Below are positions 719 to 59,920 of a DNA stretch of 64,000 nucleotides, in pieces. Each line of letters starts with the position of its first letter. Position 1 is the first letter of the stretch. Made by a program: the position numbers and the translations under genes. The DNA comes from Ranitomeya imitator (taxonomy: Eukaryota). The stretch is taken from contig NC_091291.1 of the NCBI RefSeq assembly GCF_032444005.1, forward strand, positions 101,060,001 through 101,124,000, read 5' to 3'. Under the pieces are notes generated by a model. The model did not search any database. It was not told the origin of the DNA and saw only the letters and a list, made by a program, of their open reading frames with translations.

Positions 719-880
719 TTCCCACACTCACATCTCCCCCCAGCAGCCTCTATTATCTCCTGTATTGGAGCAGATGGACACACGTCCATTGTCCCCGCTG
801 CGGTGGGATTGGAGGATGAGTGTGGGAACCTCTTGTAAGTCCGCTCTCCACACATCATTATGCAGGGAGAGGGGTATATA
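719..880 (+). promoter_or_regulatory. hes5-A promoter: distal RBPJ TTCCCACA 719-726, E-box CAGATG 771-776, ATTGG 808-812, RBPJ TGTGGGAA 821-828, cryptic partner TCTCCACA 845-852, TATATA 875-880
   Basis: Motifs read directly; same spacing upstream of genes C and D. Confidence 0.8.
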
Positions 881-957
881 GAGGGGCGGCCGCTCACTAG
901 TAGTCAGACAGCTCCTGCCCCACACAGCACAAGGCTACAGACTGCCGGACCTGCACC

Positions 958-1688
958 ATGGCCCCATGTAATATGAGGACCCCGGACCATCAGGCTGACA
1001 GCGGCCTCAGAAAGGTAAGAGCCCCCGACTAGTGACAGCGTCACCCCCATATCTCTACATGTAGACACTTATAGGAACAGGAGTCTGATGTTTACAAGTG
1101 ATCTTAGTTGTCCTCCATAGACATGGACACTGGCGCAGGGGAATAATGAGAGATTCTTCTTCTTTTCTACAGCTGAGGAAGCCGGTGATTGAGAAGATGA
1201 GGAGAGATCGGATTAACAGCAGCATTGAGCAGCTCCGCGTCTTACTGGAGAAGGAGTTTCAGAGACATCAGCTCCCCTCCAAACCGGAGAAAGCCGATAT
1301 CCTGGAGATGACGGTCACCTTCCTGCAGCGGCACATGGCGGAGAGAGGTGAGTGTCGTGTCCGCGCTCCTCACACCCCTCATGTGTTTGTTACTGAGAGC
1401 AGAGCAGCCGGCAATGGACGCTGTCACTGACATGTTGTCTTTCCTGTTCTAGATGTCACAGCCTCCAGCCAGACCCGGAGAGAAGGCTACTCCACCTGCG
1501 TCCAGGACGCCGTCACCTTCCTGACCCAGCACAAACAGGAGGAGCTCCAGATCCAGCTGCTGCAGAACCTCCCTGGGGCTCACACTGTGGTGTACAGGGC
1601 CGTATCTCCTCCTGTATCTCCTGTCTACCAGACCCCCAACAAATACAGCCCCCCAGACAGCAGCAAAACCTTGTGGAGACCCTGGTAG
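958..1688 (+). CDS. hes5: HES5-like bHLH-Orange-WRPW repressor (gene A), 155 aa; exons 958-1014, 1173-1347, 1453-1688
   Basis: GT-AG junctions with consistent phases (0 and 1); MAPCNMRTPDHQADSGLRK / [29 protein letters not shown]...[10 protein letters not shown] / EGYSTCVQDAVTFL...LWRPW-stop. Confidence 0.95.
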
Positions 1689-1719
1689 TGACTGTATCCA
1701 TTATGTGAGTGTGGACTGG

Positions 1720-2500
1720 GAGCTGTGCACCCCCATTATTCCTGAGAACTGGTAGCTGTGTACCCCTAGTATACCTGAGAGCTGTGTACCCCCATTATAC
1801 CTGAGAGCTGAGTACCCCCAGAATTCCTGAGAGCTGTGTATCCCCATTATACCTGAGAGCTGTGTACTTCCAGTATACCCAAGAGCTGTGTACTCCCATT
1901 ATACCTGAGAGCTGTGTACCCCCATTATACCTGAGAGCTGTGTACCCCCATTATACCTGAGAGCTGTGTACCCTCAGTATACCTGAGAGCTGGGAGCTGT
2001 GTACCCCAAGTATACCCGAGAGCTGTGTACCCCCATTATACCTGAGAGCTGTGTACCCCCAGTATACCTGAGAGCTGTGTACCCCCATTATACCTGAGAG
2101 CTGTGTACCCTCAGTATACCTGAGAGCTGTGTACCCCCATTATACCTGAAAGCTGTGTACCCTCAGTATACCTGAGAGCTGGGAGCTGTGTACCCCAAGT
2201 ATACCTGAGAGCTGTGTACCCCCAGTATTCCTGAGAGTTGTATACCCTCAGTATACCCGAGCGCTGTGTACCCCCAGTATTCCTGAGAGCTGTGTACCCT
2301 CAGTATACCTGAGAGCTGTGTACCCTCAGTATACCTGAGAGCTGGGAGCTGTGTACCCCAAGTATACCTGAGAGCTGTGTACCCCCAGTATTCCTGAGAG
2401 CTGTGTACCCCCAGTATACCCGAGAGCTGTGTACCCCCATTATACCCGAGAGCTGTGTACCCCCATTATACCTGAGAGCTGTGTACCCCCAATATTCCTA
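1720..2500. repeat. 26-bp minisatellite (GAGAGCTGTGTACCCCCAGTATACCT) starting about 30 bp after the hes5-A stop codon
   Basis: About 30 tandem units. Confidence 0.95.
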
Positions 2501-3510
2501 AGCGCAGGGGATGTGATGTCTTCTGTCACTAATGTCTCATGTGATGGGAGATGACGTTCCTTCTGATCTTGGTGTAATTTCTCTGTGATTTTCTCATCCA
2601 TCATATAATCTGCTGTCGGCTGCAGATCTCCTGTGTGCTCTCGGTCCTATATCCTTCTATGAAGAACAGTCCTGGTCCTATATGGACCCATTGTAGGAAT
2701 CTTCCCAGTGATACAATGTATCGGATTATATATAGTGTGTACTGGCTCTATAGAGAGTGATGTATTGTATGTAGATATCAGAGCTCCAGTGCAAAGCATT
2801 GCAGAATAATGGAGGTGAGACCTCCGGCCTGATATACACTGTAGATATTATGTATCAGTCCTGTAATACTACAGACGTCTGTATAGTAATATATACATTA
2901 TTGGATTCAGTATATAGATGTACTGTGTACAGCGCCCCCTATAGTTCACTATTATTAGTGGTAAATGTTCTGTATATTGAATATTCAGTAAATTACCAGG
3001 AGGCATATGTTCTGTGTATGATCATGATTAATGATTATAATGTAATGCTGATGTGTATTATGCAGGATGAGGTCATATACTTTGCCATAGTATACAATAT
3101 TTGTAGTAATTGCCTCCTTATAGTTCACTATTATTAGTGGTAAATGTTCTATATATTATACTGTATTATGTCCGTCTGATAAATTATCAGAATATTCTAA
3201 ATTCTATGAATTGTACATTATGTGATCTGTATTATGGATTATTATGCTCCATGGTTTTCCTATGTGGTATGCAATATTTGCATCAAATGTTAGAAAGTTA
3301 TGTATAATATACACTGTATGGTGCAATATTTGCAGTATTACATCAGTGATGTTGCGTATATTATACACTGACTGCGCGTGTCTGTATACTCTGTATACTC
3401 TTATCAGTGGACAATGTTCAGTTGTCATACATTGTGAGATAAGTTGCAATCAATAAAATAAATTATTATATATTAGTGTTGTGATGTTATTACAATGTTA
3501 TCATCATTAA

Positions 3511-4790
3511 CCCATTCCCCACCAAAATACTGGCGTTTCTCTTTGCAGAGTTCTCCTAATGACCACCTGCAGAAATGGGCCTAAGGATTAAATATATGGC
3601 TATAGTAATAAATGGGGTCAGATTGTGGGGCCGACTGGAGAGTTTAAGTTCTAGGACGCGAGCAATGAAACCTTCTCCTGTAATGGGGACAATGCCCAAC
3701 TCCCTTCTGCGAAACAGTATATTGATTATATTAATATTATTCATTATATTTCCCATAGAGTACTCCATCCTCTCCGGTGTTCACAGTAATGGGATCTAAG
3801 GGGTAGCATTTCTCCTTGTGGAGAGTGACAAGCCAGGCCTGGCAGGAGTGAGGAGACTTATATGCCATGCATGCTCCTCCTCTTCCTCTCTGAAGAAGCA
3901 ATTTGCATGGATAATGGGATCTCATGGGGATGTCAGCCATCTTTATCACACCCCCACATACTCTGTCCCTAGAGGCTAGAGTAGGGGCTCATATGCAGCA
4001 CATGTGGCTATCATCAGCCATGAGGTCATGGTAGTTATTATCCACAGGTCTGAGACAATGCTGTGATCATGCGTATGTAATAAGAAACTCACCAATCTCT
4101 ATGTGTTGGATAAATCATAGCCCTGAAAATCAGTGTTACCGGGACACTGTAATATTCTGACCCCACATACCGTGGTGTGGGGAGCATACATATGTTCATA
4201 CTATGAAATACATCAGTAGGGTAAAAATACACTTTACACGGCTGGAGAAATAATTCTTGATGCCATAGTGGCAGAAAAGGGTTTTTATTTAACAACGCGT
4301 TTGGTGTATTTTTCTATTACAAAAAAAACGTTGCTTTTGTACATTAGTTTTGGCATCAAAACAAGTTTTTTTTTAACAACGCGTTTCGTTTCCAAACTGG
4401 CATCTTTTTAAAGTACAAAAAAGTCGTTTTTTTTAATATTTGAGAAAAACACCAAATTGGCGTCAAAACGCATTATTAAATAAAAAAAAAACTGCTTCTA
4501 TTACTAGAGCAGCAAGAATTTTATTTTTTTTCCAGCCACACAGTCTACATTTTAAGGTTTTTTGTTTTTTAACCCTAGTGGGATGAAATTTTATCTGCCA
4601 CAAGGCAGCTGCAACTTTGATTTTTAAGGGGGGAGACCCTTTTTTCCCTAGGGGGTGCAGCACCATCTTTTGGACATATTTTTTCACCTGTGCTAGGGTC
4701 ACCCAATGGTTGCGTGTTCCTTTCCCTCCACAGCACCTCTTGCATGCCCACGGGCCACTAGATAATAGGAGCCCGCTGCCATATCCCAAA
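3511..4790 (-). mobile_element. Possible degenerate piggyBac-like remnant
   Basis: TTAA-CCC end at 3507-3513; minus-strand frame 4463-4789 contains HPTRVKKQKTLKCRLCG, reminiscent of a piggyBac C-terminal cysteine-rich domain; second end not found. Confidence 0.35.
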
Positions 4791-5507
4791 CTATGAAGCC
4801 GCAGATTCCTTCAGTCTATTTGATTGCATGTAAGGAGTTACAGAATTTCTTATCTCACATTGAAACGATGCAAAATAATAAAAAAGATATTTACAAGCAG
4901 TAACAAGAAAGATACAAATAATAAAACAAGTCATTTCTAAATATTTATTAATATATATTCTAATTTTTCAATAAACGTATATTCATTAAACAGCACGCTT
5001 GACATGTAATAACACATGATACAATGTATTCTACAGATATACATCATAGATGTGACATCACAATTATTAGATATTGCACCATTACATATACAGCAATAAG
5101 ACAATGCAGCGGAAGAAACCTTCTCTTACATAAGACTTGTACATATTCTACATATATAGCACAATCTATAGGGGGCATTAATTTAATATTGGTTCGAATA
5201 TACTGTATATCTGTACATGTTGTACATATCATGTACATAAGACCAGTCACAGCCAACCTCTGGCTTACCAGTTGTTGCAGAACTACAACTCCCAACATGT
5301 CATGATAGCCTGTGTAGAATAAAACATTTGATTTACATATCAAATTAAATGAATTTACATAACTCTAAACACCAGTAACTGTAAGTTCCCATAGGGACCA
5401 CTATGATACAGCATGAAAAATGCTCTCCAAATTTCAAAGACTCATTATTGAGTGCTGGAGAAAACATCCTCATAGGATATTATGAAGTCCATCAAGGTGA
5501 TCTCCCA

Positions 5508-5575
5508 CTGCCAGGGTCTCCACAAGGCTTTTCCACTGTCTGGGGGGCTGCTTGCTGGGGGTTTGGTAGACGGGG
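5508..5575 (-). pseudogene. hes5: Relic of a hes5 last exon (SPPDSGKALWRPW) with the stop mutated TAG>CAG and a 2-nt deletion relative to genes A/B
   Basis: Aligns by eye to the 3' end of exon 3 of gene A; WRPW codons at 5511-5522. Confidence 0.8.
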
Positions 5576-6010
5576 ACTGTATGTGTGTATAACCATCTAT
5601 TGGATATTCTGATATAATTCTGATACATTGATACTTACAAATATCTGTAATCACCCAGTATACTACAGATTATATTTATATATCAGGGTCCTTTTGCAGG
5701 TTTCTAGTGTTTTTTTTTTCTATTTTTTGTCATCCTTGATATTCATAGGGGGAAGCCTTATTATTACATATTGATTGATTGTTGAAAAATTGGGATTAAT
5801 GTGCCCTACTCTGCCCACAGTCATGCATGTCTTCGTGTTTTGTGTTTTTTATTTGTTTTTAAAGAGTTTTGCACTTGTTTCAATAAAGCCTTGTTGTGCT
5901 GTTTTTATGTTTGGGTGTGCACTATGATTCTATGTAGCTTTTCTTTATACAAATTCATTTTCCTTTTTTGCGCAGATTGTAGCACCCTAATATTATTTTA
6001 TGGTGCCCAC

Positions 6011-6069
6011 CTTTCTTTTTCCATTACGTGCGTGGATCATTGAGTCTGGATGAGGCTGTAAGCGGCCAT
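6011..6069 (-). pseudogene. Putative relic hes5 exon 1 (ATG GCC GCT TAC..., in-frame TGA at codon 11, ends AAAG/gtgggc)
   Basis: Lies just downstream of the copied TATA box; ATG-GCC start and AAG/GT donor like genes A/B; 59 nt, so out of phase. Confidence 0.45.
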
Positions 6070-6143
6070 CAGTCAGGGAGTGTGCAGAGGTGTCCTCTCT
6101 GCAAATGGGATATCAGTGATGTGTAGCCAGGGGGACAAACGCA

Positions 6144-6352
6144 GCCCCTCTATATACCCCTCTCCCTGCATAATGATGTGTGGAGAGCGGACTTACAAGA
6201 GGTTCCCACACTCATCCTCCAATCCCACCGCAGCGGGGACAATGGACGTGTGTCCATCTGCTCCAATACAGGAGATAATAGAGGCTGCTGGGGGGAGATG
6301 TGAGCTGGAGTGTGGGAGCCCCCGGCCACAAGATGGGACCTGCACCGACCAC
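6144..6352 (-). promoter_or_regulatory. Third copy of the hes5-A/B promoter (pseudogene promoter); 6144-6304 identical to 727-887
   Basis: Base-by-base comparison 161/161; distal RBPJ site changed to CTCCCACA. Confidence 0.9.
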
Positions 6353-6459
6353 TGGTTCTTTCCCTAATGATTTTAGTTTTAGGCCATGTGCTTACTGTCA
6401 TTGTAATGTATGTTTGAAGTAAGGACCAGGAAAAAGCAAAGGTCAAATATATCTATATA

Positions 6460-6745
6460 CAACCCCTGGCAAAAATTCTGGAATCACCGGCCTTGGAGGA
6501 TGTTCATTCAGTTGTTTAATTTTGTAGAAAAAAAGCAGATCACAGACATGGCACAAAACTAAAGCCATTTCAAATGGCAACTTTCTGGCTTTAAGAAACA
6601 CTAAAAGAAATCAAGAATATGAAATATTGTCGTCAGTAATGGTTACTTTTTTAACCAAGCATAGGGGAAAAATTATGGAATCACTCTGTAAATTTTCATA
6701 CCCAAAACTAACACCTGCATTAAATTAGATCTGCTGCTCGTTATT
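6460..6745 (+). mobile_element. Tc1/mariner left-end fragment (TA-CAACCCCTGGCAAAAATT)
   Basis: TA-flanked terminus with internal direct repeat GGCAAAAATTCTGGAATCAC / GGAAAAATTATGGAATCAC. Confidence 0.6.
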
Positions 6746-6948: not shown

Positions 6949-7598
6949 NNNNNNNNNNNNNNNNNNNNNNNNNNNNNNNNNNNNNNNNNNNNNNNNNNNN
7001 NNNNNNNNNNNNNNNNNNNNNNNNNNNNNNNNNNNNNNNNNNNNNNNNNNNNNNNNNNNNNNNNNNNNNNNNNNNNNNNNNNNNNNNNNNNNNNNNNNNN
7101 NNNNNNNNNNNNNNNNNNNNNNNNNNNNNNNNNNNNNNNNNNNNNNNNNNNNNNNNNNNNNNNNNNNNNNNNNNNNNNNNNNNNNNNNNNNNNNNNNNNN
7201 NNNNNNNNNNNNNNNNNNNNNNNNNNNNNNNNNNNNNNNNNNNNNNNNNNNNNNNNNNNNNNNNNNNNNNNNNNNNNNNNNNNNNNNNNNNNNNNNNNNN
7301 NNNNNNNNNNNNNNNNNNNNNNNNNNNNNNNNNNNNNNNNNNNNNNNNNNNNNNNNNNTTATCTTTCTATTANNNNNNNNNNNNNNNNNNNNNNNNNNNN
7401 NNNNNNNNNNNNNNNNNNNNNNNNNNNNNNNNNNNNNNNNNNNNNNNNNNNNNNNNNNNNNNNNNNNNNNNNNNNNNNNNNNNNNNNNNNNNNNNNNNNN
7501 NNNNNNNNNNNNNNNNNNNNNNNNNNNNNNNNNNNNNNNNNNNNNNNNNNNNNNNNNNNNNNNNNNNNNNNNNNNNNNNNNNNNNNNNNNNNNNNNNN
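6949..7598. other. Assembly gap (N runs 6949-7358 and 7374-7598)
   Basis: Ns in sequence. Confidence 1.
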
Positions 7599-7599
7599 N

Positions 7600-7644
7600 A
7601 TCTGTTATCTATCTATATATATAAATATCTCTATCTATCTATCC

Positions 7645-7707
<63 letters not shown>

Positions 7708-7710
7708 GTC
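7600..7710. repeat. (TATC)n microsatellite
   Basis: Tandem TATC units. Confidence 0.95.
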
Positions 7711-10044
7711 TTTTGAGGTTTGGTATTTGCCTGGGGGGCTCTGCACCCGGACTCTTTCTTTGTGGTGCTCTAATTCTCTTTTTTTCTATCTATCTGCCTA
7801 GCTATTGATCATAAATTTAATAATAACAATACTATTAGTCGCCAACATTCACTACAATGATCTTCAATCTATGGCGCTACAGCTGTTATTATACTAGTTA
7901 AGTAAATAAGGTAGCACACTGCAGCGCTAGAACATACAAACTTGAAATACGAAATTTGAACTGCATTACTGCACTAGAAATATGAAAAATGAGAGCGTTT
8001 AGCGCATAAAAATGGCCAATTTTATGTGTACCTGGTAGCCCCTTTACGGCATCTCTCTTATACCAGGTCCTAAACTTGCCTTACCTCGCTGAAAATAAAC
8101 GTCTCCATCCATTATACTAGAGCTCCATGCTGAGAGTTGCAGTTCCATGACAACTTTAGAACTCATATTGACAAGTGATTATTGAAAAAAATGCACAGCA
8201 AGGCTACCGTAATTGACAGCTATTTATTTATGTATCAACGCTTTTATCATTTAATTAGTAATAAACTATAAACTAATGTGATATGTGATAGCTGAGTATC
8301 TGGTCTCTGGAGAGAGGATGTGGTGGTGTGATAAGAGACGTCTGACATCTCGGTGACACCTCATTATCCTCAACATCAAAGGGGAAGGTGTACTGGACAG
8401 TGTCTGGGGTATATATTATTTTTGTTATTTATTTTTAAAGCACCAAAAATTACAGGCTGCACTGCTGTATACATGGTACAAGGTTTAAGTATATAACAGA
8501 AGACTTAAACACATCTATATGAGTGATAGACTGTGTCAATATAACAATGCAAGACACATATTATTATTTATTTATGTGTGGCTGGAAGTATGCAAATCGC
8601 GGAAAATCCTCTGAACATGCGGTGTGTGCAATGTGAGGATTCACAATTCTCCAGTCACATAGAGTAACTGCAGACTTGTAGCTGAACTGCTGTCAGTCAA
8701 GATATGACAGTGCCTAGTATGCACATTGAGGGGATGTAATAGTGCACCATATCACGGATGCACCAAGATGCCCCCAAATTTGCATACAAAATAAATAATT
8801 TGTCTTAACGCCAACTAAACCATTACAATCTGTATTGTTTATTTGATTTTTATAGGTTCAAAGTCCAATATAGATACCTACCGGTAAGTGTTTTCCTCAG
8901 TGTTTGGGGGGGAGCAGACTCCTTTTAAATGGTACCTGACACATCACATGACTCAAGATGCCCTCAAAATCTAGCAGCTTCATTATCATCGTTTTAATAA
9001 ATTACTAATGATTAAAAAAAAATCTAAACAAACAATGGACAGTGTTCAAGGAAACATTTTATTGCAGAGAATCCACGACAACTTTCATAAGCAAAAGCAT
9101 CTGATATTTACGGAAATACTCACTAATTTATCAGGCAAGTATAGAGATCTAGAAATATCACATCGCAAATATAAATGCGTTACTATAACACAATACACTT
9201 TAAATTATATTATAAGATATATATGACATGGTGACAATTCTTGCAAATGTTGCATACCCCCCAAAAAAATAAATATATAGTACTGACTGCAAATATTGCA
9301 CACCTTGCTATATACTGTAAGTAGCTGAACAAGTCCTTTACTAATAATATACATTGTATATAGGATTACTGCAAATATTGCAAACATAAAATAAAGTAAC
9401 AAAGTACTAAAATCCCAATGTAATGTACATGGCAGATATACATTCATATATAAAATATGATACAACTAAGGCCAATATGTGACCACACTAATCATCCATA
9501 TCATCCGATATACATGACAGCATGCTAGGACTCTATATAAAGCTGATACACGCTGAAAGTGCATATTGTTATACAGACGTCTGTAGTATTACAGGACTGA
9601 TACATAATATCTACAGTGTATATCAGGCCGGAGGTCTCACCTCCATTATTCTGCAATGTTTTGCACTGGAGCTCTGATATCTACATACAATACGTCACTC
9701 TCTATAGAGCCAGTACACACTATATATAATCCGATACATTGTATCACTGGGAAGATTCCTACAATGGCCTCAATTTATCAAAGAGATTATGCCAAAATTC
9801 TAGTGCAAATCACTTTGAAAATTTGAAAACACAAAGTTGCACAAAAACTTTGCCGGGCTTGATGAATTGGGGCCATAGTGTCCTTGTAGCACTGGGACGG
9901 TGTCTACATAGGAAAATATAGAACCAATAATATGATTGATTAGTAAATCACGTAGTAATTACATCAACTCCCATCACATGATGAGACATTAGTGACTGGC
10001 AGAAAACATCTCATCTCCTCTGGGGTGTGCTGGTATACACAACT

Positions 10045-10637
10045 CTCGGGTTTACTGGGGGTACACAGCTCTCAGGTATACTGGGGGTACACAGCTCTCA
10101 GGTATACTGGGGGTACACAGCTCTCAGGTATACTGGGGATACACAGCTCTCAGGTATACTGGGGGTACACAGCTCTCAGGTATACAGGGGGTACACAGCT
10201 CTCAGGTATACTGGGGATACACAGCTCTCAGGTATACTGGGGGTACACAGCTCCCAGCTCTCAGGTATACTGGGGGTACACAGCTCTCATGTATACTGGG
10301 GATACACAGCTCTCATGTATACTGGTGGTACACAGCTCTCAGGAATACTGGGGGTACACAGCTCCAAGTTCTTGGGTATACTGAGGGTGCACAGCTCTCG
10401 GGTATACTAGGGGTACACAGCTCTCAGTTCTCAGGTATACTGGGGGTACACAGCTCCAAGTTCTTGGGTATACTGAGGGTGCACAGCTCTCGGGTATACT
10501 AGGGGTACACAGCTCCCAGTTCTCAGGTATACTGGGGGTACACAGCTCTCAGCTCTTAGGTATGCTGAGGGTACACAGCTCTCGGGTATACTGGGGGCAC
10601 ACAGCTCTCAGGTATACTGGGGGTACACAGCTCCCAG
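10045..10637. repeat. 26-bp minisatellite 3' of hes5-B (same family as 1720-2500, shorter array)
   Basis: Tandem GGTATACTGGGGGTACACAGCTCTCA units. Confidence 0.95.
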
Positions 10638-11395: not shown

Positions 11396-11472
11396 GGTGC
11401 AGGTCCGGCAGTCTGTAGCCTTGTGCTGTGTGGGGCAGGAGCTGTCTGACTACTAGTGAGCGGCCGCCCCTC

Positions 11473-11634
11473 TATATACCCCTCTCCCTGCATAATGATG
11501 TGTGGAGAGCGGACTTACAAGAGGTTCCCACACTCATCCTCCAATCCCACCGCAGCGGGGACAATGGACGTGTGTCCATCTGCTCCAATACAGGAGATAA
11601 TAGAGGCTGCTGGGGGGAGATGTGAGTGTGGGAA
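11473..11634 (-). promoter_or_regulatory. hes5-B promoter: TATA 11473-11478, RBPJ 11525-11532, CCAAT 11541-11545, distal RBPJ 11627-11634
   Basis: Inverted copy of the gene A promoter. Confidence 0.8.
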
Positions 11635-29378: not shown

Positions 29379-30383
29379 TGACTAGTAGTATCCTTTTTTT
29401 TTTATGGATAGCACTCGTCCCATATTATTCAACGAGGCTGTGCACGTGTCTGATTTTTTTCCTCTCACCGTGTGGTCCGAGAAAAAAAAACGCAGCATTC
29501 TTGATTTGACAATCAGATTGCACCATTCAAGTCTATAGGGCAGTGGAATACATCAGACCACCCTCGGATGACATCTGAGTGCATTGCGATTTTCACGGAC
29601 AGACTGAATGAAGAAGGTGCAGAAACGTTTTTTTTATTTTCTACACCTGCAAGAAAGTCAGATCACACTATGATCTAACTCTGATCAGAGTGTGATTAAC
29701 ATAACTGGTCCGATTTTCTTGGATGAGAGAAAAACAGTCATGCGACCCTAGCCTTGGGGTGGCAGTATCAAATGTAAAAAAATTATAAAATAGAAAGGCT
29801 CACATCACCTTCTGACTTTTCTCGAAACATAAATAAAAAACTAAAAAAAAAAGAACACATGGTATCGTTGAGTGCAAGGCTCTCCTAAATAATAAGATAT
29901 TATCATATATTTTCCAATACTCAACTCCAAAATGAGAAAATTAATATGTAAGTGGTCGCCTCCCCAAAAATTGGACCTCGAAGAGCAATAAGAGGGGCCC
30001 ACTAGGACTGTGTCTCCCCAAGGGCCTGGATAAACCTGGACTGGGTAAGATTTTTGCTAATTACAGTTATATGTTGTATACTCACCCATGAAGACAAAGG
30101 CACAATGTAATAGATGATGACAACTGTCACGCGGCGGTCTTGGCACAGTGTCCTCTCCTGAGTTTCCCTCCAATGTCAGATATTTGATCCAGTGGATGAA
30201 GCACGTGTCTGGAGGCCACACGAGCCTTTCCCAGAATCTAGTGTATCATTACCAGCCCCGACCCCATTGTCATTCCATCCTCCACCTGCTGCTGAACAGA
30301 GGGTTGTTATCCTGAGGCAGTTCCACAGATAATTTAGCATCTAGTAATTGAAGCCCTCCGTATTGTTTGGGGGGGGTTCCTCG

Positions 30384-30458
30384 ATTGGCTGCCGACTGTG
30401 GGAAACTTCACAGAGCTCAGGACTCACAGATTCAGCTGCTGATATGCACTTATAAATA
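30384..30458 (+). promoter_or_regulatory. hes5-C promoter: ATTGG 30384-30388, RBPJ TGTGGGAA 30397-30404, cryptic GACTCACA 30421-30428, TATAAATA 30451-30458
   Basis: Same spacing as the A/B/D promoters. Confidence 0.8.
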
Positions 30459-30533: not shown

Positions 30534-33500
30534 ATGGCGCCCACCGGCACGTCTGCAGAGTCTTGCAATAATGGTCAAAAGTGCAAAAATGCCTTCAGGG
30601 TAGGTATTAGGTGATGTAAAAAAAAATCTTAAACTCACAACATAACTTGTGGATGGAATGGTCCTGTCCATTAGAGCTAGCAATCGATATATGTGTCAAT
30701 CAGGGCTTAATCGATTTTATGTATTTATTTTTTTACAGCAACTGAGAAAACCGGAGGTGGAAAAGCTGAGACGAGACAGAATTAACAGCAGCATTAGACA
30801 ACTTAGATTGCTGCTGGAGAGTGAATTTCAGAGCCATGAGCCTAACACCAAACTGGAGAAAGCCGACATTCTGGAGATGACAGTCAGTTATTTGAAAAAG
30901 CGCCACATGCTGGTGAATGGTAAGTACTGCACTGCGCACTCTTACGGTAATGGTGTAAAGTGTTCATTTATCCACTGGCGGAATCCTATCTATGTGAGGT
31001 GCATAAGTAATAGTTAGACATGAGCATTATTCGGAAAGGGGCCCAAGGGCTTCCCGCTAAGAAGACTCCGGTATTATAGAGGGCACATGTTAGGCAAAAA
31101 CACTATTATAGATTTTCAGTTGCTTCAGGTTATATCAAATTGTCAGATATGAAGCCTAGGACTGTTTTATGAAGGTTGCACTTGCATCAGGCTACCACTA
31201 TCTGGAGGTCCGGGCTATCCTTAGCTGCATAGGATGCCCATTTTATGACACCATTTATCGATCAGGATCATAGGTTCCTAATATAAGTGGGATCTGATAG
31301 GTGCCAGATTACGAAATGCTCCTGATTATCAGATGTTGGATTATTAGAATTTTGTTTAATTGACTGGAGGTTCGTGATTTTCTCAGGTGCATTGCATTGG
31401 ATACAGCCTTCGTTTGTCATTTCACAGTAAAAGCTTTATCTACAATCGTCCGGAATTATCTAAATTTATCTGAATTAATTAATCACCAATCTTAATATCT
31501 GGAACAAACATATCATTGGTACAAACTGTGCAGGCACCAGGGGCCCAAGACACAAGGGGGCCCACTTCTACCTCCAAGCCAGCAAATAGCTTCTATCACA
31601 GACACGTAAAGGGGTGAATGATGATGCGTTTTGGAATGCAAAGGGCCACAGACTTGAACAGGGGCCATTTTAGCCCAGGTCAGCCCATGCTTATTAAACT
31701 ATTCATTGGTCCAAGTATGCATGTACCTGATAGTTGCCATTGATGGACCTGATAACTTTCATATTATGAAACATTTCAGATCAGATGTCAGAATCATGGA
31801 TTTCTATGGTGCACTGTAATCATAGTGCTAAAAGTATTTGGCTCCCCTTGACCAATGCTCAAAAGCAGGGCTCCCCAACCTGTAGCTCGGGAGCCACATG
31901 TGGCTCGCGGCCCCATGAATTGTGGCTCGCGACTGTCTGTCAGCTTGATGCATTAGGTCCAAGTCTAGCAAACAGGTATGAAAAGCACATCTCAAAAGGG
32001 TGAATTTTGTGAGTAGCCCTGCACAGAAGATCAGATCTGGATGCACATTTACTGGTCTTAGGGGTTTAGAGATGTTTTAGGTATGGTACGCTGGAGGTTT
32101 GTACTACCTGTTAGAAGAGGTGCTCAAAGCTGGATGTGACAATGTGTTGGGAGAATACTGAATGGGGATATTGTGGGAACCCCTGGATCTCAGTGTACTG
32201 CTCTGGAGTGATTTCTGTGGAAAAGCTTTGGTTATCATTATACCTGTAATGGGGGCTTTGGTTGACACTACTTTGAAGGGGGTGGGAGCTGGATGTGGCT
32301 CGCGACCCTCTCGCTAAGCTGAATGTCTCAACTGAGTTAGATTGATTGCTAACGAGCTTTAACACAAAAAAAAAAAAAAAAAAGAGATCTAAGGGCTAGC
32401 CTTCTATAAATGTAGATGTAGCTTGGGGATGCATTCGTGCACTGTTATTCGTGTATTTTTTATTCAAAGTACTTTTTTTTCTAAGTACTCGGCAGTTATA
32501 ACATGGCAGTTAGACAGGGCAGGAGACAGGTAAGAAAAACTAAATCTAAACCATATTCACTTGAAACAGCACAAATACTCACCATATTTATTTGTATAAT
32601 CTATATTCTGGCTGCTGCATTCACTCACATTCACCGCCCTCGCATTAACTCTCTACACTCCATCCATATCGGCCCCTCTGTCCTTGCCTCTCCTATGTAT
32701 AGCACTCATGCTCTGTTCACATTGCTTAACAGCACAGATCCATTCAGTCCCAACATCCAACACAAGAGACGCTCTCACAAATCACTTAACCATCTGCTCA
32801 CTCTTTCGATCCTCCTTCTCCTAGTCGCTGGAGACATTTCGCCAAACCCCGGCCCCCCCATGTTATAGCCAGTCAAACCTCCCAATTGCTACACCCAGAA
32901 ACCCCTCTAACCTTATTAATATTCCCTGCATGCCTGCTGTCTCTTTCAATTGTGCCCTTTGGAATTCTCGCTCTGTGTGTAATAAACTCTCCTTCATTCA
33001 TGACTTCTTCCTTTCTAATTCTCTTAATCTCCTGGCTCTAACTGAAACCTGGATCCAGCAGTCAGACACCACCGCTGCTGCTGCTCTTTCATATGGTGGA
33101 CTACACTTTTCTCATACCCCAAGATCAGACAACAGAGCAGGTGGAGGCGTTGGTCTGCTCCTTTCACCCAAATGTACTTTCCAAGTTATCCCCCAAGTAC
33201 CCTCACTTGTCTTCCCTTCCTTTGAGGTCCATGTGGTCAGACTCTACGTCCCCTTCTCCATGCGAGTGGCGGTGGTGTATCGTCCTCCCGGCCCCTCTCA
33301 TCAGTTCCTGGATCACTTTGCCACCTGGCTTCCACACTTTCTCTCCTGTGACACCCCCACCCTTATCATGGGTGATTTCAACATCCCCATTGCCTCTCCC
33401 CTCTCCCCATCTGCTTCTCACCTTTTATCTCTATCCTCCTCTTTTGGCCTCTCGCAGCATACTAACTCTCCAACACATGAAGATGGAAACTCCCTTGACT

Positions 33501-41890: not shown

Positions 41891-42795
41891 ACATGATGTG
41901 AAGACATTACAAGGTAAGTATATATTAAGATATATATTATATATTTCCATTATATTCTATACTTCAACCAGTCACTTTTTTTTATATTTCGATAAAAAAA
42001 ATAATTAAAACCTTAGAACCAATATTAAAAATAAAAATCTGAATTTATCATACATTACACTGTATAAAAATAAACTACAGATATATTTTGTAAATATAAT
42101 TTTTCATATTATTATCCTTATTATTATGAACTTTCTTGCTTCAGTGGAAGTATTCATAAAAAAAAATTCCATCCAGAGTTTATATCAGCATTTTCATTCA
42201 ACGCAAATAAACTCGCCTCCCTTTTATTTCTTTATGCAGCTACAATCGGAATGACTTTTACCATTTTTTTATACAGGGGGCTAAAAAATGTGGTAATTTC
42301 CCACCAAAGAAATCTATTGTATCATGAATTTGTAAAGGTAAATTCTGATCTAATTTCCTTGGGAACGATACTCGCTTTAATTCTCCTCCTGTTTGCCATG
42401 ATCTCATCAAAAAATAGATATCAACTTGGTAAAAAAAAAAAGTAAAACAAAAAACAAAGAGGCTTAAAGAATTAGTGAATTTTTCTTGAAGTTGTGGGAG
42501 AGACTGGGCAGTGTCTGAATAGGTTTAGACATCCTGTCTTTTGATCTTTTTGTTTCCCGCCTTGACGTGTGTCCCTATTTATGGTTGTCATTGGAATGTC
42601 TCTGATTCCAAACATTAGGCTGTGTCGGTTTCTCTCTTGGAGCCATTAACACTCTCGCCATTTCTGGCTTATTCAATTGCCCCTCTGTTATTTGGCACGT
42701 ACCCTCCACCTGTTCATCTGTCATTATTCCAAGGTCATTCACAGTCAATTTAGCGCAGCAGTAATTTAAGCTTCTATTGTGGCCACCAGTTAACA

Positions 42796-42870
42796 ATTGG
42801 TAGCCGAGTGTGGGAATGAGCGGAGAGGTTGGGGCTCAGCAACTGTGGCCTTCAAGGACGCCATTATACA
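42796..42870 (+). promoter_or_regulatory. Orphan hes5-type module: ATTGG 42796-42800, N8, TGTGGGAA 42809-42816, TATA-like ATTATACA at 42863
   Basis: Same ATTGG-N8-RBPJ spacing as all four genes; no bHLH exon found downstream. Confidence 0.6.
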
Positions 42871-53364: not shown

Positions 53365-54114
53365 TGTTGTGAATTCTGTGGCTGAGTTCACTTCTGTGGT
53401 CACAAGTGGTATTGCAGTCTCTGGGCTTCCTCCCTCAGGTGTTTTGGTGAGCTCGTTGGCTGCCTTGCTATTTAGCTCCACCTGAGTCTGTCTTCCTGGC
53501 TCCTTGTCAATGTTCCAGTGTTGGATCTGAGCTACTGCATCTTTCCTTGGGCCTGCTGCTCTGCTAGATAAGTGCTTCTAGTTTGTTTTCTGTTTTTTTC
53601 TGTCCAGCTTGCTATTGTCTTTTGCTGGAAGCTCTGAGAAGCAGAGGGGTGCACCGCCGTGCTGTTAGTTCGGCACGGTGGGTCTTTTTGCCCCTTTGCG
53701 TGGTTTTCGTTTTAGGGTTTTTTGTAGACTGCATAGTTCTCTTTGCTATCCTCGCTCTGTCTAGAATATCGGGCCTCACTTTGCTGAATCTATTTCATTC
53801 CTACGTTTGTCTTTTCATCTTGCTAACAGTCATTATATGTGGGGGGCTGCCTATTCCTTTGGGGTATTTCTCTGAGGTAAGTCAGGCTTGTATTTCTATC
53901 TTCAGGCTAGTCAGCTCCTCAGGCAGTGCCGAGTTGCATAGGTAGTTGTTAGGCGCAATCCACTGCTGCTTATAGTTGTGTGAGGATAGATCAGGTACTG
54001 CAGTCTACAGAGATTCCACGTCTCAGAGCTCGTCCTATTGTTTTTGGTTATTGCCAGATCTCTGTATGTGCGCTGATTACTGCACGCTGTGTTGCCTGAT
54101 TGCCAGCCATAACA
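53365..54114. mobile_element. 750-bp solo LTR nested in the hAT element
   Basis: TGTT...AACA termini; 6-bp TSD CCGCGG on both sides. Confidence 0.75.
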
Positions 54115-54589
54115 CCGCGGCCCGTCCTCCCCCCCCCCCCCCCGCAGTGAGATAATCCCGTGCCGCTGGAGGTTCGCTTGCTTCAAGGAAGGAGCCCCTT
54201 CCTTTTCAGTCTAAGCGCCTGGCCGGCTGCGCCCCGCCCCCTGACGACCGCTGAGAGGCACAGGCTGACGTCACAGTCTGACTGAGCGTGTGACTCACTG
54301 TGACACATCTCACACAGGCAGGCTGCTTCATAACCGCTGGTCGTTCGTTGCGCCCCTGTACCGGTGACTGAGACTCGGTTTGTTCGTTCGCTCGGGGTTC
54401 GGGCGTGTCGTCGTGCAGTCAGTGCTCGTGTGTAGTATTACTAGTAGTCACTCACTGTAGGAGGAGGGGGAGCCGGGGAGGGAGCGCTCAGCAGCGGCCA
54501 GGGCAGGGGCAAGTTGCAAACTGGGTATGTAACGAGACTGTCAGACTCACTCACTCACTGTTGTGAGAATGAGTCTGACGACTGTGATG

Positions 54590-55257
54590 GGGGCACAGAT
54601 CAGGACAGTATGGGGGCAAAGATCTGGACATTATGGGGGCACAAATCTGGACAGTATGGGCCATAATGTCCAGATTTGTGCCCCCATAATGTCCAGATCT
54701 GTGCCCCCATACTGTCCAGATTTGTGCCCCCATACTGTCCAGATGTGTGCCCCCATACTGTCCACATCTGTGCCCCCATACTGTCCACATCAATGCCCCC
54801 ATACTGTCCACATCTGTGCCCCCATACTGTCTACATCTGTGCCCCCAAAGGGGGCACAAATCTGGATAGTATGGGGGCACAAATCTGGACAGTATGGGGG
54901 CACAAATCTGGACATATGGGGGCACAAATCTGGACAGTATGGGCCATAATGTCCAGATTTGTGCCCCCATAATGTCCAGATTTGTGCCCCCCATACTGTC
55001 CTGATCTGTGCCCCCATACTGTCCAGATTTGTGCCCCCATACTGTCCAGATCTGTGCCCCCATACTGTCCAGATCTGTGCCCCCATACTGTCCAGATCTC
55101 TGCCCCCATACTGTCCACATCTGTGCCCCCATACTGTCCACATCTGTGCCCCAAAGGGGACACAAATCTGGATAGTATGGGGGCACAAATCTGGACAGTA
55201 TGGGCCATAATGTCCAGATTTGTGCCCCCATACTGTCCAGATTTGTGCCCCTTATAC
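54590..55257. repeat. 21-22-bp minisatellite (ATACTGTCCAGATTTGTGCCCCC) in alternately inverted blocks
   Basis: Orientation flips at about 54660, 54848, 54945, 55153 and 55205. Confidence 0.9.
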
Positions 55258-56070
55258 TGTGGGGGAGGGGGGGGGGCGCCGAACTGATCCTTTGCCCCGG
55301 GTGCAGGAAAGGCTAGATACACCTCTGTCCTTACCCGCTGGCTGCAACATTGGATTGAAGTTCAGTCTCTGTCCTCCGTAGTACACACCTGCGCAAGGCA
55401 AGATTGCCTTATGCAGGCATGTACTACGGAGGACAGAGAATGAACTTCAATCCAATATTGCAGCCAGCATGCAGCCAGCGGGTAAGGAAAGGGTGAATCA
55501 AACACCCGAAAACCCCGCCCCTATGGCTGAAGATTGTTCCCTCCAAATTCAGGTGACAGAGTCCCTTTAATCTTTTGAAACAGAGCAATGAAAATGAAAC
55601 AATAATACAAAAAATAACATATAAAGACATCTTAAAACCTACAGATAAGTACTGCAATCCGTTTTATTACAAGGTTCACAGCAAATTCCATACAGTTATA
55701 CAGTATGTGCTCCTTCTCATTTTTTTTTTAATATATCCTTTATTCCACATATTTTTTCCTCTTCTTACAGTTCTAGAACTTCTAATTCCACTGCAAATCC
55801 TGAGAAACAGAATAGAAAACCTCACTTCTCTCAGCGTCAGTAGTACCGGTGGTGAGAGCACTGTATTAATGACGTCGTGATTGCAGAACATCTCTGTGGA
55901 TGTGAGTTCAAGTACCAACTGGGCTTCTTTGTTTTTTTTTTTTTTAAATAATAACAAAATAAGATCTGCTGTAAATAGAATGTTACAATGTGTCTCATGA
56001 AAAATGTATCACTGCCTTTGTTATGAAAGAGCTAATTTTTGCGCCTTAATTATTTTATTTGTACCTGCTC

Positions 56071-56083
56071 TGTAGGTGGCGCT
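56071..56083 (+). promoter_or_regulatory. CTCF-like motif (CTGTAGGTGGCGCT)
   Basis: Matches the 3' half of the CTCF core; unverified. Confidence 0.35.
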
Positions 56084-56317
56084 GTTTGCACTGCACTGTA
56101 CAGGCTTCACCTGGAGACAGAACAATACAAATAATACTGCCACACTTTGCATTTATAATACCGTCATATAATAACATTGACATATAGTGATTCCCATACA
56201 TGTTCACTTTGTCTACCTGCAGTCAGTGAGTAGGAATATTTTTATTTTCATCCAAGGCTAAACACCCTGTAGACATATACACTTGCATAGATGACTCACA
56301 TGGATAGGATACACGGA

Positions 56318-56407
56318 GCTCCAGTGGCGCAATCGGTTAGCGCGCGGTACTTATAAGACAGTAGCTGAGCAATGCCGAGGTTGTGAGTTCAAGCCTCACC
56401 TGGAGCA
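56318..56407 (+). tRNA. trnI-UAU: tRNA-Ile(UAU) with a 16-nt intron (56356-56371); anticodon TAT 56352-56354
   Basis: GCTCCAGTGGCGCAATCGGTTAGCGCGCGGTACTTATA-[intron]-ATGCCGAGGTTGTGAGTTCAAGCCTCACCTGGAGCA; intact acceptor stem, A and B boxes. Confidence 0.95.
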
Positions 56408-56409
56408 GG

Positions 56410-56415
56410 TTTTTT
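56410..56415 (+). terminator. Pol III terminator (T6) of the tRNA-Ile gene
   Basis: TTTTTT 3 nt after the discriminator base. Confidence 0.85.
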
Positions 56416-57239
56416 GCCAGATTCTGCATTTTCCCCTACCCCCTTTGGTGATTTTCACTCTTATGTTTGCTCAATAGTCATTTCAATAGCAAACACTAAA
56501 GCTATGGCACCTCAATAAAGATAAAACCTTAATCCTGGAAAATAACAAGTTCCGCTACTTTCTCATATACTTTGTACTTAAAGGGTTTGTCCTGTGAAAA
56601 CAAGTTATCACCTATCTGCAGCATAGTGGACTGACCTCTGGGATCTGCACCGATCAGCGGAAAGGGGAGCCTTATACCCAGTACAAAATGGAGCAGCAGG
56701 TGAGATGGACAACCACAGCTCAACTCATTTTCTATGGAGCTGCCGGTAAAAGCAGAAGGCAGCGTTTGGCAGCACCATGGGGAATGAATGCAGCGGTGGC
56801 GGGGCATGTGCACTGCGCTCCATTCTAACAAGGATAACAGTACTGATTGGGGCAAGTCCCAGTGTTTCTGCCTCCACTGATCAATAAGTTGTAACCTGTC
56901 CGGTAAAAAGGTAAAAAGGTTATAGCTTTCACTAGGATCAACCCTCCTTAGCAGGAGTGACTGAATAATACCGCATACAAGGAACAAATACCACCACACC
57001 ATGATCAGTCCTCATATTACCACCAAATGGTGGCCGAATTATGCCACATACAAAAAACAAATACCGTCACATCATTAACCGATCACATATTACCATCACA
57101 TTGTAACTGAATAATACCACATGCAAGGGAGAAATACTGCCGCACCACGAGAAGACCACAATTACCACCACATAATGACCAAATAATACAATAGTGATCA
57201 TTAATTTAAAAAAAACCACAATACTAAATGCCATTACAC

Positions 57240-58080
57240 ACAGGAACTCTGCATATATTGTCAGTGTACAGGAAATACAGTGATCACCAGTGACGTTATA
57301 CACAGGAGCTCTGTATATAGTGTCAGTGTACAGGTAGTACAGAGATCACCAGTGACATTATACACAGGAGCTCGGTATATAGTGTCAGTGTACAGGTAAT
57401 ACACTGATCACCGGTGACATTATAGACAGGAGCTCTGTATATAGTGTCAGTGCACAGGTAATGCAGTGATCACCAGTGACTTTATACACAGGAGCTCTGT
57501 ATATAGTGTCAGTGCACAGGTAATGCAGTGATCACCAGTGACATTATACACAGGAGAGCTGTATGCATTGTCAGGGTACAGGTAATACAATGATCGCCGG
57601 TGACATTATAGACAGGAGCTCTGTATATAGTGTATAATGTACAGGTAATACAGTGATCACCAGTGACATTATACACAGGAGCTCTGTATATAGTGTCAGT
57701 GCACATGTAATGCAGTGATCACCAGTGACATTATACACAGGAGAGCTGTATGCATTGTCAGGGTACAGGTAATACAGTGATCGCCGGTGACATTATAGAC
57801 AGGAGCTCTGTATATAGTGTATAATGTACAGGTAATACAGTGATCACCAGTGACATTATACACAGGAGCTCTGTATATAGTGTCAGTGCACAGGTAATGC
57901 AGTGATCACCAGTGACACATTATACACAGGAGAGCTGAATGCATTGTCAGGGTACAGGTAATACAGTGATCACCGGTGACATTATAGACAGGAGCTCTGT
58001 ATATAGTGTATAATGTACAGGTAATACAGGGGTCACCACTGACAATATACACAGGAGCTCTGTATATAGTGTCAGTGTAC
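57240..58080. repeat. ~62-64-bp minisatellite followed by (TATC)n
   Basis: Tandem CAGGAGCTCTGTATATAGTGTCAGTGTACAGGTAATACAGTGATCACCAGTGACATTATACA units. Confidence 0.95.
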
Positions 58081-59846
58081 AGTGTCTATTATCTATCTAT
58101 CTATCAATCTATCTATCTATCTAGCTATCTATCTATCCATCCATCTATCCATACACCCATCTATCTTATTTCTAGCACAATAGGAACATTGTTTTACTCC
58201 ACCATGATCACAGACGCATTCTCTCATCTCCTCCAGTTCACTGTAACTTTATGTTAAATATGAAACAGCAGATCCTGAATTTCCAGTCACACAGACCCAT
58301 CACAGACATGTCCGGGGGCAGCCACATCCCTGCTATGTGCAGAGTGGATCTCACTGGAGGTCAGAAGCATCGCTGTCTTGTCGACATATAATTCCCTGAT
58401 AAATGATAATGAAGTGGTCAGTTATTGTGTCTCAGGATCAGACATCATTGCTGTGTGATATCACTTACAGAGAACCTGTCACCAGGTCAAAATGGTCCTG
58501 TTTTTACTCCCATTATATTTCCACCGCTCCCCTGAATATTCTGTTATTTTTTAGTTATTTTTATAAATCCGTCATATTGTAGCAGAGGTATGGGACTTTT
58601 TATTTAGTGTTAATTATTATTGCCTTTACAAAGGGGCGGTACTCGCAAGATAATTATTCAGAGAACTCTAAAGACACGCCCCCGAGGATCCTGTGAGCCA
58701 CAGCCCATTGTAAAGACCGTAAAAATTAGCACTAAATAAACAGGGCCGTATCTCTGGAGGCATATGGTGGGTTTCAACAAAAAAGCACACAAAATGGATT
58801 CTTAAGGGGAGCCGTGGGAATATAATGGGAGCAATAACTGGTCACTTTTGACCTGGTGAAAGGTCTTCTTTAAATGAGCGTTACATTAGAGTCTGTGGTG
58901 TTTGTGAAAAATAGTAGGAGTCACAGATTGCTGAAAATTCAACCAAGCCCATTCAGAGTCATCCTTAAAGTCAGTGCTCCCCAGCTACTGCAGGACAGTA
59001 ACCCTCAACCTGCCTTAAAGCTGTCAGGGCAGGCTGAGGTTTGTAGTTCCAAAAAAGTTTGGAGAGACCCTTTTTGACAACCAGTGGCGCAGTCAGCGGT
59101 GTGGCTATAAGGGGACCAGAAATAGCATTTGCATCTGAATTCTGCCATGTGAGGGGACACAAAGGCCATGAGTGACCTGACAACTCCCACCCATCTGAAT
59201 TTTATATGGGTATCATCGGGGGCATAACTATAAAAGGTGCAGGGGTTTCAATCGCACCCGGGGCCCTGGAGCCTAGGGGGGCCAAAAAGTTGGAGCTTTG
59301 CATTCGGGCCCCTGAGATTCAAGTTATGCCATGAAAACACAGTACCTGTACTGCCTTGGCTCTATCAGTCTCATAGACAATGAATGGAGGATGGTGCACA
59401 TACTCGGCCATTGCTCTATACAGATGGAGGGATTGATTGTCTATGCAGCGATCGGCAACTTATCTCATATCCAGTTGATAGTTCATGTTGTTATGGCGGG
59501 ACAACCCCATTAAACGTGTCGGGGGCATATTTGCTTATCTAGGTCGTACTCCTACAGTGTGGCCATAGAGCAGTAACACAATACTCAGTTCCACCCTGGG
59601 GGCAATCACCGCTGTGTGACGGCTCCTTGCCCCCTTCATGTGGCAGCAGGTTGCAAACACTATGGGTGGAACTTTCCCAGGTCTTGACAGCGCGGCCATG
59701 TGTACGGACCCCGCGTCCTTTATACAGCACACATGCCTGACATCTGGGGGGGGGAGTGAGGAGTGTGTGTGTGTGTTCTTTCTTTTTTTGGCTAGGATGA
59801 CTTCAGAAGCATGAATGAAAGTGGCTGTTGTCCTGCGGCCGCAGTG

Positions 59847-59920
59847 ATTGGACTCTGAGTGTGGGAAACCATGTGTTGGCTGCCGTCCATACATTCACAT
59901 ACTGAGGAAGGGGTATAAAA
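59847..59920 (+). promoter_or_regulatory. hes5-D promoter: ATTGG 59847-59851, RBPJ TGTGGGAA 59860-59867, TATAAAA 59914-59920
   Basis: Same spacing as A/B/C. Confidence 0.8.

What the first reader, a model, noticed from the sequence alone, without database searches (positions are those of the whole stretch)
808..59920. Rigid promoter grammar shared by all hes5 paralogues: ATTGG-N8-TGTGGGAA-N46-TATA
Seen: in genes A (808/821/875), C (30384/30397/30451), D (59847/59860/59914) and, inverted, B and the pseudogene, an inverted CCAAT box lies exactly 8 nt before the RBPJ site, and the TATA box begins exactly 46 nt after it. The spacer sequences of A, C and D are unrelated. In A and C a degenerate inverted half-site (TCTCCACA, GACTCACA) sits 16 nt after the RBPJ site. 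Established: TGTGGGAA is the RBPJ/Su(H) site, ATTGG binds NF-Y, and paired Su(H) sites (SPS) use 15-17-nt spacers. Inference: base-exact spacing across diverged paralogues suggests a stereospecific NF-Y/Notch-complex/TBP module. SPS-type motifs in frog Esr/hes5 promoters have been described, so only the fixed spacing may be new.
Basis: partly seen in the sequence, partly recalled or inferred. Interest (0 to 1): 0.7.

Follow-up and report, generated by a model that had tools for sequence, protein, structure and literature searches.

The report
Conserved Notch-responsive hes5 core promoter
The repeated motif string is the real, already published core promoter of frog hes5 genes (CCAAT box, Notch/RBPJ site pair, TATA box); its spacing is conserved across land vertebrates but is not strictly base-exact.

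Summary
Observation confirmed. ATTGG-N8-TGTGGGAA occurs six times in the window against 0.01 expected. A TATA box follows at 46 nt in five copies and a degenerate TATACA at 48 nt in a sixth, orphan copy (42796) that this finding did not list.

Only four copies are independent, because A, B and the pseudogene promoter are 93-96% identical recent duplicates. The spacers are not unrelated: A and D share 52% ungapped identity, and the 8-nt spacer has a consensus close to CTnCYGAG.

I compared 27 hes5 promoters, about 20 independent lineages, from four frogs, a caecilian, crane, alligator, anole, platypus, opossum and sheep.
- ATTGG to RBPJ site: 8 nt in 18 lineages and 9 nt in 2 (one archosaur paralogue).
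- Second, inverted, degenerate site: in register at 16 nt almost everywhere.
- RBPJ site to TATA: 45-47 nt, mode 46. One intact Xenopus tropicalis paralogue has 34.

A cDNA contig carrying a template-switch adapter puts gene D's transcription start at 59944, 30 nt after the TATA.

The architecture is already published: an inverse CCAAT flanking paired Su(H) sites next to the TATA in X. tropicalis Hes5 genes (PMC7699193), and a chick/mouse/human Hes5 promoter alignment (PMC3201213). NF-Y binding and stereospecific cooperation remain inference. Ordinary to mildly interesting.

The parts
786..881 (+). Gene A core promoter: Sox-like CCATTGT 786-792, inverted CCAAT (ATTGG) 808-812, RBPJ site 821-828, degenerate inverted partner TCTCCACA 845-852, TATA 875-881. 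A distal inverted RBPJ site lies at 719-726. CDS exons are 958-1014, 1173-1347 and 1453-1688.
11472..11567 (-). Gene B core promoter, a near-identical inverted duplicate of A: ATTGG 11545-11541, RBPJ 11532-11525, partner site 11508-11501, TATA 11478-11472. A distal RBPJ site lies at 11627-11634.
6150..6245 (-). Pseudogene promoter copy. It is part of a 210-nt fragment (6141-6352) that is 96% identical to A's promoter and diverges about 10 nt after the TATA. ATTGG 6223-6219, RBPJ 6210-6203, TATA 6156-6150.
30360..30457 (+). Gene C core promoter: Sox-like ATTGT 30362-30366 (17 nt before ATTGG, through a G run), ATTGG 30384-30388, RBPJ 30397-30404, partner GACTCACA 30421-30428, TATA 30451-30457. 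Probable ATG at 30534; bHLH exon at about 30760.
42774..42870 (+). Orphan module E: Sox-like ATTGT 42776-42780, ATTGG 42796-42800, RBPJ 42809-42816, decayed partner GGCTCAGC 42833-42840, degenerate TATACA 42865-42870 (48-nt gap). No hes coding sequence was found in the 2 kb downstream.
59825..59921 (+). Gene D core promoter: GTTGT 59827-59831, ATTGG 59847-59851, RBPJ 59860-59867, weak partner CGTCCATA 59884-59891, TATA 59914-59921.
59944..61427 (+). Gene D transcript as seen in public cDNA-type contigs. The 5' end at 59944 is preceded by a template-switch adapter tail. Exons are 59944-60036, 60131-60310 and 61106-61427 or beyond. ATG at 59954.

Best explanation
These are the proximal, Notch-responsive core promoters of a tandem hes5 (Esr-type) gene cluster in a dendrobatid-like frog. 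All descend from one ancestral Hes5-family promoter.

The unit is about 100 bp. Positions in brackets are relative to the mapped start of gene D.
- A Sox-like C(A/T)TTGT (about -117).
- An inverted CCAAT box (-97 to -93).
- A high-affinity RBPJ site TGTGGGAA (-84 to -77).
- A degenerate inverted partner 16 nt downstream (-60 to -53), forming a 'cryptic' sequence-paired site.
- A TATA box at -30.

Inferred mechanism: RBPJ sits on the strong site. On Notch activation, NICD-MAML complexes load there and cooperatively on the weak partner, which needs the 16-nt register. A CCAAT factor, most likely NF-Y, and SoxB1 proteins give promoter competence. TBP on the TATA fixes the start site.

The constant spacing reflects purifying selection on a densely packed composite element. 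It is strict for CCAAT-N8-RBPJ and for the 16-nt pair, and tolerant to plus or minus 1 nt between the pair and the TATA.

Shown here: the motif positions, their conservation and spacing across tetrapods, and transcription, splicing and the start site of gene D. Inferred: which proteins bind, and any cooperation among them.
For: Statistics in the window. The genes downstream are hes5-like (bHLH and WRPW motifs; 100% exon-2 identity to dendrobatid HES-5-like proteins).

Cross-species table of 27 promoters: the 8-nt gap is seen in 18 of 20 lineages. The partner site (CCCACA or CTCACA core) sits at 16 nt in nearly all. The TATA lies at 46 (12 lineages, 13 if the ambiguous Mantella TATATATA run is read at 46), 45 (4) or 47 (1).

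Controls that vary: Sox to CCAAT 15-18 nt, distal RBPJ about 100-175 nt, RBPJ to ATG 94-160 nt.

In pairwise alignments the core shows 0-1 gap events per 73 nt, against 2-6 per flank of roughly 200 nt.

Gene D start at 59944, 30 nt after the TATA, from an adapter-tailed contig; spliced contigs in four runs.

Literature: inverse CCAAT + paired sites + TATA in X. tropicalis Hes5.9, Hes5.2, Hes5.5, Hes5.7 and Hes4 (PMC7699193). Conserved TATA, CCAAT and CSL sites in chick, mouse and human Hes5 (PMC3201213). Hes5 cryptic paired site with a 16-nt gap and strict 16-nt preference (PMC7685452). Conserved SOX2 sites in the Hes5 promoter (PMC10141063).
Against: No binding or Notch-induction data exist for this frog. 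The start site is mapped for D only, from one contig.

The partner site is poor in D (CGTCCATA) and lost in E. One intact X. tropicalis paralogue (L007 9245-) has the TATA at 34 nt and no 16-nt partner, so the layout is not obligatory.

ATTGG followed by CT also contains an NFI-type TTGGC half-site in many species. However, A, D and E lack TTGGC while keeping ATTGG.
Confidence: 0.85

Rival explanations
1. The identical spacing carries no separate function. It is inherited from one ancestral promoter, and indels are excluded only because nearly every base lies in some overlapping binding site. This would be general sequence conservation, not stereospecific phasing.
For: The core is more conserved in sequence (60-86% identity) than the flanks (about 45-60%) in the same pairs. 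The 8-nt spacer has a consensus, CTnCYGAG, leaving few free positions. A-D spacers are 52% identical. The TATA distance drifts by 1 nt in several lineages, and one intact paralogue lost 12 nt.
Against: Between paralogue classes (A, C, canonical Hes5) the segment from the partner site to the TATA is almost unalignable, yet it stays at 21-23 nt. The 8-nt gap survives changes at up to 5 of its 8 positions.
Confidence: 0.4
2. Gene conversion among tandem paralogues keeps the promoters, and hence their spacing, alike within a genome.
For: A, B and the pseudogene promoters are 93-96% identical. Three X. tropicalis promoters and pairs in Ascaphus and Rhinatrema are identical or nearly so.
Against: C, D and E differ from A at most non-motif positions but keep the spacing. 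The same spacing holds in species with a single Hes5 gene in the locus fetched: platypus, opossum, sheep and anole.
Confidence: 0.15
3. The ATTGG element is bound by a factor other than NF-Y, for example NFI through TTGGC, or it is part of an extended RBPJ-flanking site.
For: ATTGGCT, which contains TTGGC, is the commonest form across species. No paper in the searched library links NF-Y to Hes5.
Against: All five bases of ATTGG are invariant in 27 of 27 promoters, whereas the following C is not: A has ATTGGA, D has ATTGGA and E has ATTGGT. The position, about -95 in a TATA promoter, fits the known NF-Y preference; that preference is from my own knowledge and was not checked here.
Confidence: 0.15

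Closest known systems
Xenopus Hes5/Esr-cluster promoters (Hes5.9, Hes5.2, Hes5.5, Hes5.7 and Hes4; PMC7699193 Fig. 2A. The earlier Esr1/Esr10 analysis by Lamar and Kintner 2005 is cited from my own knowledge; the paper is not held in the library.)
   Same: [quoted passage not shown] My X. tropicalis loci L001 and L007 show the same 8/16/46 layout as the window.
   Different: This is a different frog family (dendrobatid-like). The paper does not state the exact distances. The window adds an orphan module and a promoter-only duplicate.
Amniote Hes5 promoter (chick Hes5-1, mouse and human; PMC3201213) and the mammalian HES5 'cryptic' sequence-paired site (PMC7685452)
   Same: Conserved CCAAT box, proximal high-affinity CSL site, a cryptic inverted partner at 16 nt, a TATA box, and a second, distal CSL site. 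Sheep, opossum, platypus, anole, crane and alligator loci show the 8-nt (or 9-nt) and 16-nt registers.
   Different: The TATA distance is 45 in sheep, opossum and the archosaur type-2 paralogue. The CCAAT gap is 9 in archosaur type 1. The TATA is degenerate in opossum and platypus. No human sequence was fetched.
Drosophila E(spl)-complex SPS architecture (from my own knowledge, not tested here)
   Same: Inverted paired Su(H) sites with a fixed spacer close to the promoter of Notch-target bHLH repressor genes in a tandem cluster.
   Different: The partner motifs there are proneural E-boxes. No CCAAT-N8 rule is known to me there, and no sequence homology was tested.

Membership tests
Sequence-paired-site (SPS) Notch target promoter | High-affinity RBPJ/CSL site (C/T)GTG(G/A)GAA | tested here: met
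   Exact TGTGGGAA in all six modules. There are 15 sites in the window against 2.8 expected.
Sequence-paired-site (SPS) Notch target promoter | Second site in inverted orientation with a 15-17 nt (optimum 16) spacer | tested here: inconclusive
   At exactly 16 nt: TCTCCACA (A, B, pseudogene), GACTCACA (C), CGTCCATA (D), GGCTCAGC (E). These are degenerate, like the published Hes5 'cryptic' site. The CCCACA/CTCACA core is conserved at that register in most other species (PMC7685452). Whether such sites support dimer loading cannot be judged from sequence.
Sequence-paired-site (SPS) Notch target promoter | Transcription induced by NICD/RBPJ | not testable with these tools
   No functional data for this species. 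Notch dependence is shown for X. tropicalis Hes5.9 in PMC7699193.
NF-Y-dependent CCAAT-box promoter | Intact CCAAT pentamer in either orientation | tested here: met
   ATTGG is invariant in 27 of 27 promoters from 12 species.
NF-Y-dependent CCAAT-box promoter | Position about -60 to -100 from the start site | tested here: met
   For gene D, ATTGG at 59847-59851 lies at -97 to -93 from the mapped start at 59944. For the other genes this is inferred from the identical distance to the TATA.
NF-Y-dependent CCAAT-box promoter | NF-Y trimer occupancy | not testable with these tools
   No ChIP or CUT&RUN data are available. No paper linking NF-Y to Hes5 was found in the library.
TATA-box core promoter | TATA(A/T)A about 25-31 nt upstream of the transcription start | tested here: met
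   For gene D, the TATA starts at 59914 and the adapter-tailed cDNA contig starts at 59944. This was not tested for A, B, C or E.
hes5 (Hes/E(spl) bHLH-Orange repressor) genes downstream | bHLH with the Hes-type basic region and a C-terminal WRPW | tested here: met
   bHLH and WRPW motifs are present for A, B and D. C has a bHLH only, and the pseudogene a WRPW exon only. Best hits are HES-5-like proteins carrying Pfam HLH. Exons were searched singly and were never joined.

The most novel reading that the evidence does not exclude
The near-invariant 21-nt composite ATTGG-N8-TGTGGGAA is an obligate co-binding platform. On it, NF-Y, bound 8 nt upstream, helps a Notch complex load on the strong site and so enables dimer formation on the weak 'cryptic' partner. 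This would be the 'missing promoter element' that Crow et al. (PMC7685452) postulated after the isolated Hes5 paired site failed to show dimer dependence while the full promoter did.
Probability: 0.2. Interest if true: 0.55.

Novelty: already known. Interest (0 to 1): 0.3.

Why it matters
Hes5 promoters are the standard read-out of Notch signalling in vertebrate neurogenesis and somitogenesis. Knowing which distances are fixed (CCAAT-8-RBPJ and the 16-nt pair) and which are tolerant (pair to TATA, 45-47 nt) helps in designing minimal reporters. It also points to the CCAAT box as a candidate co-element for the poorly understood cryptic paired site. The architecture is already in the literature, so the gain is a cross-tetrapod quantification and a testable hypothesis, not a new kind of element.

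Tried and rejected
(1) Fish her4/her15 and true Hes1/Hes4 promoters could not be reached. All three word-based protein searches list only the best 120 hits, and these were amphibians, sauropsids and mammals.

(2) The Lamar and Kintner 2005 Esr1/Esr10 paper is not held, so the comparison rests on PMC7699193.

(3) Read laying returned assembled contigs only. It cannot give start sites for A, B, C or E, or expression levels. Only D's 5' end was informative, because one contig kept its adapter tail.

(4) I compared indel density in the core against the flanks. The core has fewer gaps, but the flanks are only about 45% identical, so their gap counts are unreliable. I do not treat this as proof of a length constraint.

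(5) Exons were never joined. The protein query was the stop-free reading frame window:1098-1427, scored on exon 2 only. blastx of genomic stretches was used in place of a spliced model.

(6) No human HES5 sequence was fetched or compared.

(7) The assembly gap was neither filled nor looked up.
Full report
**1. What is in the window**

ATTGG-N8-TGTGGGAA occurs six times: 808+, 6223-, 11545-, 30384+, 42796+ and 59847+. Dinucleotide shuffles predict 0.01. When the gap is allowed to vary from 0 to 30 nt the same six hits are found, all at 8 nt. Adding TATA at 44-48 nt gives matches at all six places and none in the shuffles. The gap is 46 nt for five of them and 48 nt for 42796.

Downstream of 808, 11545 (inverted), 30384 and 59847 lie Hes-type bHLH exons. 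For A, B and D there are also WRPW ends. Gene A has exons 958-1014, 1173-1347 and 1453-1688. Its exon 2 is 100% identical to HES-5-like proteins of Ranitomeya and Phyllobates, so the window comes from a dendrobatid-like frog.

**2. Independence of the copies**

A and B are arms of an inverted duplication (678-2322 against 11675-10036, 92.6% identity). The 'pseudogene' promoter is a 210-nt copy of A's promoter at 96% identity. It ends about 10 nt after the TATA. There are therefore four independent modules: A-type, C, D and the orphan E at 42796. E has no hes coding sequence downstream, a decayed partner site and TATACA in place of a TATA box.

The assembly gap (6949-7599) lies between the pseudogene and gene B, 726 nt from the nearest module. 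It touches none of the measured distances. It was not filled.

**3. Are the spacers unrelated?**

Not entirely. Ungapped identity of the 46-nt spacer is 52% for A-D and 24-41% for the other pairs. The flanks give 25-40%. The 8-nt spacer ends in GAG or GAC in every copy. Across species it has the consensus CTnCYGAG.

Exactly 16 nt after the RBPJ site lies a degenerate inverted site: TCTCCACA, GACTCACA and CGTCCATA in A, C and D. A Sox-like (A/G)TTGT lies 15 nt upstream of ATTGG, or 17 nt in C.

**4. Transcription**

Public cDNA-type contigs cover gene D as three spliced exons. One contig starts at 59944 directly after a 20-letter tail ending ...AGAGTACGGG. From my own knowledge this tail is the 3' end of a SMART template-switch oligo, so it marks a cDNA 5' end.

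That position is 30 nt after the first T of the TATA (59914). It places the RBPJ site at -84 to -77 and ATTGG at -97 to -93. This rests on one contig from one run, and no start site was obtained for A, B, C or E.

**5. Other species**

I fetched hes5 loci from these species:
- Xenopus tropicalis (two loci)
- Ascaphus
- Mantella
- the caecilian Rhinatrema (two loci)
- crane
- alligator
- anole
- platypus
- the opossum Gracilinanus
- sheep

Every promoter was measured, 27 in all, and these collapse to 20 lineages once near-identical tandem copies are merged.

| Distance | Result across 20 lineages |
|---|---|
| ATTGG to RBPJ site | 8 nt in 18; 9 nt in 2 (crane and alligator type-1 paralogue, one event) |
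| RBPJ site to partner site | 16 nt, with a CCCACA or CTCACA core, in nearly all |
| RBPJ site to TATA | 46 nt in 12 (13 if the ambiguous Mantella TATATATA run is read at 46); 45 in 4 (archosaur type 2, opossum, sheep); 47 in the caecilian canonical Hes5; 48 in orphan E; 34 in one intact X. tropicalis paralogue (L007 9245-), which has also lost the 16-nt partner |
| Sox-like site to ATTGG | 15-18 nt |
| Distal inverted RBPJ site | about 100-175 nt upstream |
| RBPJ site to ATG | 94-160 nt |

In pairwise alignments the core has 0-1 gap events per 73 nt, against 2-6 per flank. The flanks are too diverged for this to be a clean test.

**6. Reading**

It is tetrapod-wide, not only shared among frog paralogues. 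It is graded rather than rigid:
- The contiguous ATTGG-N8-TGTGGGAA block and the 16-nt pair are near-invariant.
- The stretch down to the TATA tolerates plus or minus 1 nt, and in one case a 12-nt loss.

Because several spacer positions are themselves conserved, fixed length may follow from dense packing of sites rather than from helical phasing as such. Sequence alone cannot separate these two readings.

**7. What is already known**

[quoted passage not shown] It aligns Hes5.9, Hes4, Hes5.2, Hes5.7 and Hes5.5 with all three elements.
- PMC3201213 aligns chick, mouse and human Hes5 promoters and marks conserved TATA, CCAAT and CSL sites.
- PMC7685452 describes the Hes5 cryptic paired site with a 16-nt gap and the strict 16-nt preference of all four Notch paralogues. 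It also notes that the isolated Hes5 pair is not dimer-dependent whereas the full promoter is, and it predicts other promoter elements.
- Conserved SOX2 sites in the Hes5 promoter are reviewed in PMC10141063.
- No paper in the searched library connects NF-Y with Hes5. This is not proof of novelty.

**8. Verdict**

The architecture is already known.

What this work adds is a table showing which distances are fixed across tetrapods, a natural spacing variant, a mapped start site for gene D, and a testable idea: that the CCAAT box 8 nt from the strong RBPJ site is the co-element the cryptic pair needs.

No human sequence was used.

Noticed in passing
window 19123(-) and 16024(-); also L001 13944-/16118-, L007 22284+, L004 1065+/2700-/15099-/17009-, L006 2155-/7624-/14715-/17452-, L010 4824+/5933-, L003 15404-, L008 285-: Intergenic modules lay out like the promoter: Sox-like C(A/T)TTGT, then about 27 nt on AAT(A/G)G-N7/8-TGTGGGAA, then ACTCACAC 15-16 nt after. 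They lack an intact CCAAT and TATA. They recur between hes5 paralogues in every tetrapod examined. They may be conserved Sox+paired-site Notch enhancers, possibly decayed promoters of lost paralogues. L003 15404- is clearly a decayed promoter copy, and orphan E at 42796 could be an intermediate stage.
   Followed up: partly
window 5508-6352: The 'pseudogene' keeps only a 210-nt promoter fragment (6141-6352, 96% identical to A's 685-890) and a WRPW-ending exon (about 5511-5590). Similarity to A stops about 10 nt after the TATA, so the duplication breakpoint lies just inside the promoter. Whether it drives an antisense or non-coding transcript was not tested.
   Followed up: partly
L007 9245(-) (Xenopus tropicalis, gene 7662-9130): An apparently intact hes5 paralogue has a promoter that keeps ATTGG-N8-TGTGGGAA but has its TATA only 34 nt downstream. 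A TTCACAC lies 7 nt after the site in place of the 16-nt partner. This is a natural spacing mutant worth testing for Notch inducibility.
   Followed up: no
window 1716-2515 and 10036-10637: The 3' flanks of genes A and B carry a tandem array of repeats at about 85% identity, with offsets of roughly 26-60 nt in self-BLAST, starting right after the stop codon. Its nature was not examined.
   Followed up: no
window 59954-59962 and 61106/61124: Gene D has a 5' UTR of only about 10 nt, followed by three tandem ATGs. Contigs from different runs use two junction forms at the last intron: 60310 to 61106, or 60313 to 61124 with 11 other letters between. These probably reflect allelic or species differences among the runs.
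   Followed up: no
window 7600-7670: The right edge of the assembly gap is an (ATCT)n-type microsatellite. A 14-nt island (7359-7372) sits between the two N runs.
   Followed up: no
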